Shown: in pieces, positions 33,031 to 34,450 of the stretch
How the letters are laid out: each line of letters begins with the position of its first letter
How positions within the stretch are numbered: position 1 is the first letter of the stretch
From: Diadema antillarum
Taxonomy: Eukaryota
Assembly (NCBI RefSeq): GCF_040938485.1
Contig: NW_027271233.1
Coordinates: forward strand, 620,001 to 684,000
Direction: 5' to 3'
Length of the DNA: 64,000 nucleotides
The notes under the pieces: model-generated
Told to the model about the DNA's origin: nothing
What the model saw: the letters and a program-made list of their open reading frames with translations, nothing else
Database searches by the model: none
Made by a program: the position numbers and the translations under genes

Positions 33031-33951
33031 GTCAGTGTGATGATATATATGTATATATATATTTTTTTTGTACAGTGTATTTGCTTTGCTTTCTAAAGCC
33101 CGATTACTTGTATATTCTAAAATTTTGATTAGAAACAAAAACTACCGATAGAAATAATTGACATGGCAATATCCGCCAATTGAAAATAGAATCAAAATGA
33201 AAGAATCTTTCTTTATCAAAATGTGATGAAAACAACCACGATGTCTTATTAGCAATCATAGGATTTAATGGTTGTTATATGCGATGTAATAATATGCTGA
33301 GGACCCATTCAAGTTATGCATGCTCTTCTCATGATGTCGGTCTCACATAGAGTTTTATGTTGTAGATTAGTAAAACTTTCTTCAGTTAGGAGAGATAATT
33401 ATCAGAATTTTATTCTTTTAGGAGAAATACAACAATCAACATGTGAACTTTTACTGGGGCTATTAAACGTTAAAATGTATTAAGATTCCTGGAATACCCT
33501 TTCGCTAAATATGCATTTAAAGAAAAAGTGAATTATATAGAAATTCTAAATAATATTGCAACAAATTGTCAAAATAATGGACACAAACACACTTATTTGA
33601 AATGTTAAAGGTTAGTTTGAAAAAAAAGTATATGGTTTTTATCGAAATTACACGACAAAGAATAAGATGAAACATTTGTGAGCTTTTATTTTATACTTAT
33701 TCGGTGAACACGTACAGTGTATTTAAAAAAGAAGTAGAACGTTTATTATTGTACTCTCAAAGACTTTTTTGGAACGCAAGAACCCAATACAGGATCTAAT
33801 GAATTAAGAAATCGTTCTAAACTCCTAAGTTGGTACAGTTTACGTTTAGATATTGGGCTTCAGTTTTCGAACGTTTTTGATGATTTTTTTTTCTTAGATA
33901 ATGAGAAACCTCTTATGAATTCGGAAATATCAAATAATTCTAGTATTATTC

Positions 33952-34270
33952 AAATTCTTTAAATTCTTCCGTCGAGGTTTTTTCATTGCAACTGATTGAC
34001 AAATTGCACTACATCGACGTAAATAAGCATTGAACTGAACACTGTTTTGGTAGTAGCCATGATAAAAGTAAGGATTAGAACAAACACTTGCTGTCGGGCG
34101 AAAGCTCGGTGGTCTAGTGGAGATGACGCCTGTCCGGTGATCAGGAGGTCGTGGGTTCGAATCCTGCTCGAGTATGTACGCCCATGATTTTTATCATGGT
34201 TACTAGCAAAACACTGATCAATTCAGTGCTTATTTACGTTGATGTAGGGCAATTTGTCAATCAGTTGCAA
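33952..34270. mobile_element. Non-autonomous retroposon-like insertion: tail + ~82-bp inverted arms enclosing a tRNA-like cassette; 16-bp TSD
   Basis: Direct repeat AATTCTAGTATTATTC at 33936-33951 and 34269-34284. Arms at 33986-34067 and 34189-34270 are reverse complements with about 10% mismatch. Confidence 0.8.
34103..34174 (+). ncRNA. tRNA-like (SINE-head/pseudo-tRNA) Pol III cassette, most similar by eye to tRNA-Pro
   Basis: A-box TGGTCTAGTGG, B-box GGTTCGAATCC, cloverleaf foldable. However, A1:A72 and T31:T39 mismatch and position 33 is C, so it is not a canonical tRNA. T5 run at 34188-34192. Confidence 0.7.
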
Positions 34271-34450
34271 TTCTAGTATTATTCTATGATTGTACAGAAA
34301 TTAAAAGTGTATATGAAGAGAATCGGTTTTTAAATGGCTGAGCTATCGAAACGAACGAAGCGAGCCTAATAAAATGAATATGGGATCTTTATCTTATTAG
34401 GGTTTTACTTTTGTTTTATACCTCAGTCATTTCAAACCCTATTTTCATCA

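What the first reader, a model, noticed from the sequence alone, without database searches (positions are those of the whole stretch)
33936..34284. Candidate new retroposon type: tRNA-like Pol III cassette inside inverted arms with a Penelope-like tail
Seen: 16-bp TSD - 34-nt tail - 82-bp arm - 35-nt linker - tRNA-like unit (34103-34174, + strand, A and B boxes) - CCATGAT-TTTT-ATCATGG micro-hairpin containing a T5 run - inverted arm - TSD. Unlike a normal SINE, the tRNA part is central, is antisense to the tail-bearing strand, and is followed at once by a Pol III terminator. A second copy (6185-6278) keeps tail and both arm ends. Established: long variable TSDs indicate TPRT, and tail-plus-inverted-repeat insertions typify Penelope-like elements. 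Inference: a non-autonomous, possibly PLE-mobilised tRNA-bearing element. It could yield a short tRNA-like RNA from one strand and an ~80-bp dsRNA hairpin (a Dicer/ADAR substrate) from the other. No partner RT is in the window, and I cannot confirm novelty without a database search.
Basis: partly seen in the sequence, partly recalled or inferred. Interest (0 to 1): 0.75.

Follow-up and report, generated by a model that had tools for sequence, protein, structure and literature searches.

The report
Penelope-style double insertion of tRNA-like repeat
The "tRNA inside inverted arms" is not a new kind of jumping gene: it is one insertion event that laid two cut-short copies of a very common 268-base tRNA-like repeat head to head, as Penelope-like retroelements are known to do.

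Summary
In detail: a 16-bp direct repeat, 83-nt inverted arms (90% complementary), a tRNA-like unit with A and B boxes, a T5 micro-hairpin, and a mini second copy.

The 317-bp structure is not a propagating architecture. Each of about 18 independent look-alike loci has its own inversion junction.

All of them are composites of one 268-bp unit (S): a 60-nt leader, the tRNA-like part, a T-run palindrome, a body and a 38-nt tail. S occurs thousands of times, including long 268-bp tandem arrays.

Each complex, flanked by a target-site duplication (TSD), holds head-to-head copies with or without extra tandem units. In 14 of 18 loci, and in 5 of 5 further complexes, one outer end stops at S229/230 and the other at S268. 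So the tail sits at one end only.

That is the published Penelope-like element (PLE) signature: partial tandems, an inverted 5'-truncated copy, a 30-40 bp tail between two reverse-transcription start sites, and both DNA strands extended. A genuine RT+GIY-YIG element in this genome shows the same asymmetry.

No partner PLE sharing sequence with S was found. The window element is S148-268 (antisense) joined to S27-230 (sense). Earlier notes of this scan reached the same reading on other DNA.

The parts
33936..33951 (.). Left target-site duplication (16-mer). Its last 5 nt, TATTC, can equally be the outer end of the tail (microhomology).
33947..33984 (-). The 'tail', positions 231-268 of unit S. 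It is the stretch between the two alternative 3' termini (S229/230 and S268) and is present at this end only.
   Evidence: PMC8557442; PMC11167929
33947..34067 (-). Antisense, 5'-truncated copy of the unit (S148-268), 89% identical to the array unit. Its 3' end faces the left flank. It is cut off in the loop of the T-run palindrome.
34069..34271 (+). Sense, 5'-truncated copy of the unit (S27-230), 97% identical to the array unit. It ends at the first terminus (..CAGTTGCAA), without a tail.
34102..34176 (+). tRNA-like pseudo-gene of the unit (A box 34110-34120, B box 34154-34164). It has C33 and mismatched stems and is not a working tRNA.
34182..34199 (+). 7-bp palindrome around a T5 run, which looks like a Pol III terminator. 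The same palindrome is the commonest inversion-junction site in other loci (S143-151 in 7 of 18 events).
34269..34284 (.). Right target-site duplication.
6186..6240 (-). Second event, antisense piece S214-268 (tail plus 17 nt of body).
6240..6278 (+). Second event, sense piece S191-229, ending at ..CAGTTGCA. The whole 93-bp insert is flanked by a 9-13 bp TSD (TGTAAGAGA..).

Best explanation
The locus is a single retrotransposition event of a non-autonomous, tRNA-like-bearing repeat (unit S, 268 bp), inserted in the style of Penelope-like elements (PLEs).

S RNA comes most likely from read-through, multi-unit transcripts of the 268-bp tandem arrays. It was reverse-transcribed from nicks on both strands of an AT-rich target.
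- On one strand synthesis began at the outer start site (S268, ..AAATTTGAATA) and stopped in the T-run palindrome (S148).
- On the other strand it began at the inner start site (S229/230, ..CAGTTGCAA) and ran to S27.
- Joining the two cDNAs gave two head-to-head copies. Their 83-nt overlap forms the 'arms', the 38 nt between the two start sites forms the one-sided 'tail', and staggered cuts gave an 11-16 bp TSD.

Shown here: the decomposition into S coordinates, the independent junctions, the two discrete termini, the one-sided tail, the polarity rule, the TSDs, and the same geometry in a genuine PLE of this genome.

Inferred: that a PLE enzyme did it, that the template is a multimeric array transcript, and that both strands were primed rather than a cDNA snapping back on itself.

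The tRNA-like cassette is part of the unit. Nothing shows that it drives retrotransposition. Its own T5-7 run would end a Pol III transcript about 80 nt upstream of the first start site.
For: 1. Own-genome search: at least 22 full-length look-alikes at 83-100% identity, plus many arrays of period about 267 bp that hold only the tRNA, right arm and inverted tail.

2. Every look-alike has a different inversion junction, so the 317-bp form is not inherited.

3. In unit coordinates, 14 of about 18 independent TSD-flanked complexes end at S226-236 on one side and S262-268 on the other. Examples:
- window element: [-S148-268][+S27-230]
- second window copy: [-S214-268][+S191-229]
- L004: [-S18-229][+S146-268][+S3-268]x2, inside one 10-13 bp TSD
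- L046: a plain 39-nt copy ending at S229, with a 12-15 bp TSD

4. Genome-wide pattern counts (1 mismatch allowed, reversed-pattern control 0):
- 11,693 copies of the 21-mer ending at S229
- 6,117 copies of the 21-mer running on into the tail
- 3,933 copies of the tRNA-like 27-mer
So about half of the 3' bodies stop at the inner site, and 3' parts outnumber 5' parts threefold, which indicates 5' truncation.

5. Neighbouring copies on opposite strands are always (-) then (+): 9 of 9 in the listings and 17 of 17 in the loci. All 5 complexes readable have exactly one tail-less and one tailed outer end.

6. TSDs are 7-18 bp, with a mode of 12-13 including microhomology at both joints.

7. Published PLE signature:
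- partial tandems, an inverted 5'-truncated copy and a 30-40 bp tail at one end only (PMC8557442)
- a 31-bp tail on one inverted pLTR and palindromes at inverted junctions (PMC3846280)
- RT starting at two adjacent internal sites, with the tail being the stretch between them, and both strands cleaved and extended (PMC11167929)

8. PLEs are abundant in this genome. There are at least 150 GIY-YIG hits with ORFs up to 1031 aa, often in tandem or inverted pairs. Three of these ORFs were scanned and each has RVT_1 plus a C-terminal GIY-YIG domain. One such element (L050) has 1195-nt perfect head-to-head arms in a (TA)n tract, with about 63 extra nt at one end only.

9. The S tail begins with ATG, as PLE tails cover the first codons of the ORF (sequence).
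Against: - No autonomous PLE sharing sequence with S was found. S has no significant match in 30 PLE loci, each covering 1.5 kb downstream of the endonuclease domain. More DNA could not be fetched.
- S has no hammerhead ribozyme (Rfam at E <= 10; no CUGAUGA core by eye), whereas canonical C-terminal-EN PLEs have one.
- Four of 18 events have one irregular end (S67, S150, S257, S261).
- The 10% mismatch between the arms cannot tell two templates from post-insertion decay.
- No RNA data could be obtained.
Confidence: 0.8

Rival explanations
1. One reading: a new, self-propagating retroposon whose defining unit is tail, arm, linker, tRNA, micro-hairpin and inverted arm. The tRNA is central and antisense to the tail-bearing strand.
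For: At least 22 hits cover the whole 317-bp query at 83-100% identity. The second copy in the window keeps the tail and both arm ends.
Against: All of these hits have different internal junctions and different arm lengths. The only copies that share the window's junction also share its flanks: L001 and L003 are duplicates or haplotigs. The structure is fully explained as two truncated copies of unit S.
Confidence: 0.03
2. S is an ordinary tRNA-derived SINE moved by an APE- or RLE-type LINE. The inverted forms arise by twin priming, as in L1 5' inversions.
For: Twin priming also gives outward-facing 3' ends, TSDs and microhomology (established knowledge of L1). The partner of S is unidentified. 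LINE RT fragments exist in the genome, one of them in this window.
Against: - Twin priming copies adjacent, non-overlapping parts of one RNA. Here the two copies overlap by 40 to more than 200 nt, and several whole tandem units lie within one TSD pair.
- There are two discrete termini 38 nt apart, with the tail at one end only.
- There is no poly(A) or simple-repeat tail.
- The tRNA is 60 nt from the unit's 5' end and is followed by its own terminator.
- The LINE in the window shares nothing with S.
Confidence: 0.1
3. A MITE or foldback DNA transposon, with the arms acting as terminal inverted repeats and a captured tRNA gene inside.
For: 83-nt inverted repeats, a flanking direct repeat, arm ends reading TG...CA, and a strong hairpin fold.
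Against: - The left arm is not terminal: 38 nt of tail lie outside it.
- TSD length varies from 7 to 18 bp.
- Arm length and junction differ at every locus.
- Simple one-armed, 5'-truncated copies with TSDs exist (L046).
- The 3' part is threefold over-represented.
Confidence: 0.03
4. Pieces of a tRNA-like satellite that were rearranged by replication or recombination errors, or reinserted as extrachromosomal circles, without reverse transcription.
For: Arrays of dozens of units that switch polarity. Arrays are homogeneous, at 96-100% identity.
Against: Dispersed copies carry TSDs. Their ends fall at two fixed unit positions, not at random. The (-)/(+) polarity is strict. The gradient of 5' truncation is as expected for cDNA.
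Confidence: 0.04

Closest known systems
Insertion architecture of endonuclease-positive Penelope-like elements (Penelope/Poseidon, Neptune, Naiad/Chlamys; PMC8557442, PMC3846280, PMC11167929)
   Same: Shared features are partial or multiple head-to-tail tandems inside one TSD, an adjacent inverted 5'-truncated copy placed head to head, a 30-40 bp tail at one end only that lies between two RT start sites, a palindrome at the inversion junction, AT-rich targets, and short TSDs of variable length.
   Different: The unit is 268 bp and non-coding. It carries a tRNA-like Pol III cassette and no hammerhead motif, and no sequence link to an autonomous PLE has been shown.
Non-autonomous PLE derivatives (MRC1 and other non-autonomous Chlamys elements, PMC8557442; pLTR-flanked host sequences moved in trans in Adineta vaga, PMC3846280)
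   Same: [quoted passage not shown]
   Different: Those elements share their 3' ends with identified autonomous families. Here the partner is unknown and the unit contains a tRNA-like module.
Metazoan non-LTR retrozymes (tandem 150-300 bp repeats with type I hammerheads; PMC7761336)
   Same: Both are non-coding tandem repeats a few hundred bp long in invertebrate genomes, with no promoter for the full unit, and are presumed to use a retroelement enzyme.
   Different: Retrozymes are defined by hammerhead ribozymes and circular RNAs. S has no hammerhead, and no RNA data exist for it.
tRNA-derived SINEs (SINE2/tRNA)
   Same: S has a tRNA-like part with intact A and B boxes, a body and a 3' tail. 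It is retroposed, with TSDs and thousands of copies.
   Different: The tRNA part lies 60 nt inside the unit and is followed at once by a T5-7 terminator. A Pol III transcript would therefore lack the 3' region where reverse transcription starts. Insertion geometry is PLE-like, not LINE-like.
Cassandra, Helenus and Ajax (non-autonomous LTR retrotransposons with 5S- or tRNA-like sequences in their LTRs; PMC10886601, title and abstract only)
   Same: A small-RNA-gene-like module sits in the repeated terminal part of a non-autonomous retroelement that is not a classical SINE.
   Different: Those are LTR elements moved by LTR-retrotransposon enzymes. S shows PLE-type insertion.

Membership tests
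PLE-type (Penelope-like) insertion / PLE-dependent non-autonomous element | Head-to-head inverted, 5'-truncated copy next to the main copy | tested here: met
   Window element = [-S148-268][+S27-230]. The same geometry holds in about 17 further events. Polarity is always (-) then (+).
PLE-type (Penelope-like) insertion / PLE-dependent non-autonomous element | Partial or multiple head-to-tail tandems within one insertion (pseudo-LTR) | tested here: met
   L004, L009, L005, L006 and L007 hold 2-7 units inside one TSD pair. This window's copy has no tandem unit.
PLE-type (Penelope-like) insertion / PLE-dependent non-autonomous element | A 30-40 bp 'tail' at only one end, equal to the stretch between two RT start sites | tested here: met
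   The 38-nt tail (S231-268) sits at one end in 14 of 18 events and in 5 of 5 complexes read. Genome-wide, 11,693 copies end at S229 and 6,117 run on into the tail.
PLE-type (Penelope-like) insertion / PLE-dependent non-autonomous element | Short target-site duplications of variable length | tested here: met
   TSDs are 7-18 bp, mode 12-13, with microhomology at the joints.
PLE-type (Penelope-like) insertion / PLE-dependent non-autonomous element | Sequence similarity of the 3' region to an autonomous RT+GIY-YIG element of the same genome | tested here: inconclusive
   No match in 30 PLE loci with 1.5 kb downstream of the endonuclease domain. At least 150 PLE hits exist, but further DNA could not be fetched.
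PLE-type (Penelope-like) insertion / PLE-dependent non-autonomous element | Hammerhead ribozyme motif in the repeated unit (canonical clades; absent in Naiad/Chlamys) | tested here: not met
   No Rfam hammerhead at E <= 10 on three tandem units. No CUGAUGA core was seen by eye.
tRNA-derived SINE (SINE2) | tRNA-derived head at the 5' end, whose Pol III transcript spans the whole element | tested here: not met
   The tRNA-like part is at S61-133, behind a 60-nt leader, and a T5-7 run follows at S146-151. Transcription itself was not tested.
tRNA-derived SINE (SINE2) | 3' end shared with a partner LINE, or a poly(A) or simple-repeat tail | tested here: inconclusive
   There is no poly(A). There is no match to the LINE fragment in the window. 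Repbase and Dfam are not available.
MITE / foldback DNA transposon | Terminal inverted repeats at both ends and a TSD of fixed length | tested here: not met
   The tail lies outside the left arm. TSDs are 7-18 bp. Arm length varies from locus to locus.
Metazoan retrozyme | Type I hammerhead ribozyme in each tandem unit; circular RNA | tested here: not met
   No hammerhead was found. Circular RNA cannot be tested with these tools.

The most novel reading that the evidence does not exclude
S may be the first described Penelope-dependent element with a SINE-like, Pol III-type tRNA module. In this reading the tRNA-like cassette, repeated once per 268-bp unit, does a job in the life cycle. It could replace the hammerhead of canonical PLE pseudo-LTRs as the signal that cuts multimeric array transcripts (via RNase P and RNase Z). 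Alternatively it could seed transcription or open chromatin at the arrays.
Probability: 0.12. Interest if true: 0.6.

Novelty: new member of a known kind. Interest (0 to 1): 0.3.

Why it matters
For the scan, this removes a false 'new class'. Any locus in this genome that looks like a tRNA between inverted arms with a one-sided tail should be read as a PLE-style composite of unit S.

For transposon biology, the family gives thousands of natural insertions in which the two reverse-transcription start sites and the both-strand priming reported in vitro for an Anolis PLE (PMC11167929) can be read directly from genomic ends in an echinoderm.

It also raises a modest open point: why a PLE-style non-autonomous repeat carries a well-kept tRNA-like Pol III cassette instead of a hammerhead.

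Tried and rejected
- Hammerhead or other known RNA families in the unit: only tRNA matched. A MIR5048 hit (38 bits against a cut-off of 160) reflects nothing more than the long hairpin.
- Partner search: S, its tail, its leader and its arm were compared with 30 GIY-YIG loci. The only hit was a 39-nt S fragment inserted near one of them (L046).
I did not try to read flanks by other means.
- The LINE fragment in the window as partner: no similarity.
- Extra selection on the tRNA part: conservation is 0.977 against 0.93-0.97 elsewhere, which is not convincing.
- Two different RNA templates for the two arms: the excess of differences in the left copy (13 of 121 against 7 of 204, p = 0.015) lies in the subfamily-variable tail. 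Within the arms the counts are 6 against 4, so the test is inconclusive.
- Literature: no paper in the held library describes a tRNA-like PLE-dependent element or this sea-urchin repeat. Repbase and Dfam could not be queried.

Full report
**1. Observation**

- The region 33936-34284 has an exact 16-bp direct repeat at its two ends and 83-nt inverted arms that are 90% complementary.
- Between the arms lies one tRNA-like unit on the + strand. ARAGORN calls it Thr-GGT at 34102-34176. The Rfam tRNA model scores 39.6 bits.
- It has a near-consensus A box and a perfect B box. A 7-bp palindrome around a T5 run follows.
- Folded as RNA, the element is a long hairpin, z = -15.6.
- The unit is a pseudo-tRNA: it has C33 and three mismatched stem pairs.
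- The 6186-6278 copy is real.

**2. What the rest of the genome shows**

The window is contig C345 of a 1.75-Gb eukaryotic assembly. Earlier notes of this scan call it a sea urchin, Diadema antillarum, which I did not test.

A search of the genome with the 317-bp element found two things:
- at least 22 hits covering the whole query, at 83-100% identity;
- many tandem arrays of period about 267 bp that contain only the tRNA-like part, the right arm and the reverse complement of the tail.

Reading one array (L026) gives a basic unit, S, of 268 bp:
- leader, S1-60
- tRNA-like part, S61-133
- T5-7 palindrome, about S140-158
- body, up to S230 (..CAGTTGCAA)
- tail, S231-268 (ATGAAAAC...AAATTTGAATA)

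**3. The 317-bp form is not inherited**

When the 'full-length' hits are lined up at the inversion junction, every independent locus has a different junction. The only loci that share the window's junction also share its flanks; L001 and L003 are duplicates or haplotigs.

Expressed in S coordinates:
- window element: [-S148-268][+S27-230]
- second window copy: [-S214-268][+S191-229]
- other loci: [-S26-229][+S132-262], [-S191-268][+S7-229], [-S18-229][+S146-268][+S3-268][+S3-268], and so on

The 'arms' are therefore only the overlap of two separately 5'-truncated copies. The 'linker' is part of the S leader.

**4. The rule behind the structures**

- **Flanks.** Each complex is flanked by a TSD of 7-18 bp (mode 12-13), usually with 2-5 nt of microhomology to the element at both joints.
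- **Orientation.** The copies always lie head to head, with their 3' ends facing outward. Neighbours on opposite strands are (-) then (+) in 17 of 17 loci and 9 of 9 cases in the pattern listings.
- **Ends.** In 14 of about 18 events one outer end is at S226-236 and the other at S262-268, so the 38-nt tail is present at one end only. The four exceptions have one end at S67, S150, S257 or S261. A simple 39-nt copy ending at S229 with its own TSD also exists (L046).
- **Genome-wide counts.** A 21-mer ending at S229 occurs 11,693 times. A 21-mer running through into the tail occurs 6,117 times. A tRNA-like 27-mer occurs 3,933 times. Reversed-pattern controls gave 0. So about half of all 3' bodies stop at the inner site, and 3' parts outnumber 5' parts threefold, as expected for 5'-truncated cDNA.
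- **One-sided tail.** Five complexes readable from the listings each have one tailed and one tail-less outer end.
- **Junction site.** Seven of 18 inversion junctions fall in the T-run palindrome (S143-151), including the window's.

**5. Comparison with what is known**

These features are the published hallmarks of endonuclease-positive Penelope-like elements.
- Insertions are 5'-truncated and organised as partial tandems, often with an inverted 5'-truncated copy at the 5' end. A 30-40 bp tail is often present at one end only (PMC8557442).
- A 31-bp tail occurs on one of the inverted pseudo-LTRs and covers the first codons of the ORF. Palindromes occur at inverted junctions. Pseudo-LTRs suffice for mobilisation in trans (PMC3846280).
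- In vitro, a PLE protein cleaves and extends both DNA strands and starts reverse transcription at two adjacent internal sites. The tail corresponds to the stretch between those sites (PMC11167929).

The S tail starts with ATG, in keeping with an origin at a PLE ORF start.

PLEs are plentiful in this genome.
- There are at least 150 GIY-YIG hits in open frames of up to 1031 aa, often in tandem or inverted pairs.
- Three of these ORFs were scanned and each has RVT_1 plus a C-terminal GIY-YIG domain.
- One genuine example (L050) has perfect 1195-nt head-to-head arms inserted in (TA)n, with about 63 extra nt at one end only. This is the same asymmetry as in S.

**6. What is not shown**

- I found no autonomous element that shares sequence with S. 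Thirty PLE loci with 1.5 kb downstream of the endonuclease domain were negative.
- S has no hammerhead. In that respect it resembles Naiad/Chlamys-type PLEs more than the canonical clades sampled here.
- No RNA evidence could be obtained.
- The tRNA-like part is at most slightly better conserved than the rest and decays in old copies.
- Its own terminator lies upstream of both start sites. A Pol III transcript from the cassette therefore could not serve as the template. Copies that run from a previous unit's tail into S1 (L019, L021) point to multimeric read-through transcripts of the arrays as templates.

**7. Rivals**

- A fixed-architecture new retroposon is contradicted by the junction data.
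- A MITE or foldback element is contradicted by the non-terminal left arm, the variable TSDs and the variable arms.
- LINE twin priming shares the outward-facing geometry. It does not explain the overlapping copies, the multi-unit tandems inside one TSD, or the two discrete ends 38 nt apart. It stays open at about 10% only because the partner is unknown.
- Satellite rearrangement does not explain the TSDs or the fixed ends.

**8. Verdict**

The mechanism guess (PLE-type mobilisation) is supported by structure. The claim of a new retroposon type is not supported.

The family itself is a new member of the known kind 'non-autonomous PLE-style repeats' and is unusual in carrying a tRNA-like Pol III cassette. 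Earlier notes of this scan (s1-229829, s1-211258, s1-215086) reached the same reading on other DNA of this genome. I re-derived it independently and added four things: the two-terminus rule, the genome-wide counts, the junction hot spot, and the in-genome PLE parallel.

Interest is low to moderate.

Noticed in passing
window 49908-53720 (- strand): ORF fragments of a non-LTR LINE: an APE-type endonuclease (Exo_endo_phos, 52362-53720) and RVT_1 (50862-51392), broken into several frames. The window therefore does hold an RT, but it has no similarity to the tRNA-like repeat.
   Followed up: partly
L050 (G000:C197:45776-49042), arms 689-1883 and 1900-3094: A genuine PLE (GIY-YIG ORF) inserted in a (TA)n microsatellite as a perfect 1195-nt head-to-head pair, with about 63 extra nt (a 'tail') at the right end only. 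It is a very young insertion.
   Followed up: partly
G000:C2:5629946-5641140: An array of about 38 units of the 268-bp repeat on the - strand, followed directly by about 4 units on the + strand. This is a polarity switch in the same (-)/(+) sense as every small complex. The left outer end has no tail and the right outer end has one.
   Followed up: partly
L046:3163-3201 (G000:C1071): A 39-nt fragment of the repeat (S191-229) with its own 12-15 bp TSD, inserted 1.4 kb downstream of a PLE ORF. It shows that the inner terminus alone can start an insertion.
   Followed up: yes
L001 (C2657), L003 (C181) against the window; also L010/L012, L014/L015, L017/L020, L021/L022, L011/L013: Pairs of loci on different contigs share both the insertion and its flanks at 98-100% identity. 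The assembly therefore holds many haplotigs or recent segmental duplicates, and copy counts are inflated accordingly.
   Followed up: no
S229-243 and S261-268 plus S1-8 of the next unit (for example L026:1695-1712 and 1734-1751): The bases around the two termini resemble each other (TTGCAATGAAAAC against TTGAATAACAAAAGC). The two ends of the L050 PLE also share a motif (TTTTCACAC and TTCTCACAC). A short repeated motif may mark PLE start sites.
   Followed up: no
window 6070-6112: A (TG)n/(TC)n microsatellite lies about 70 bp upstream of the mini insertion at 6186-6278.
   Followed up: no
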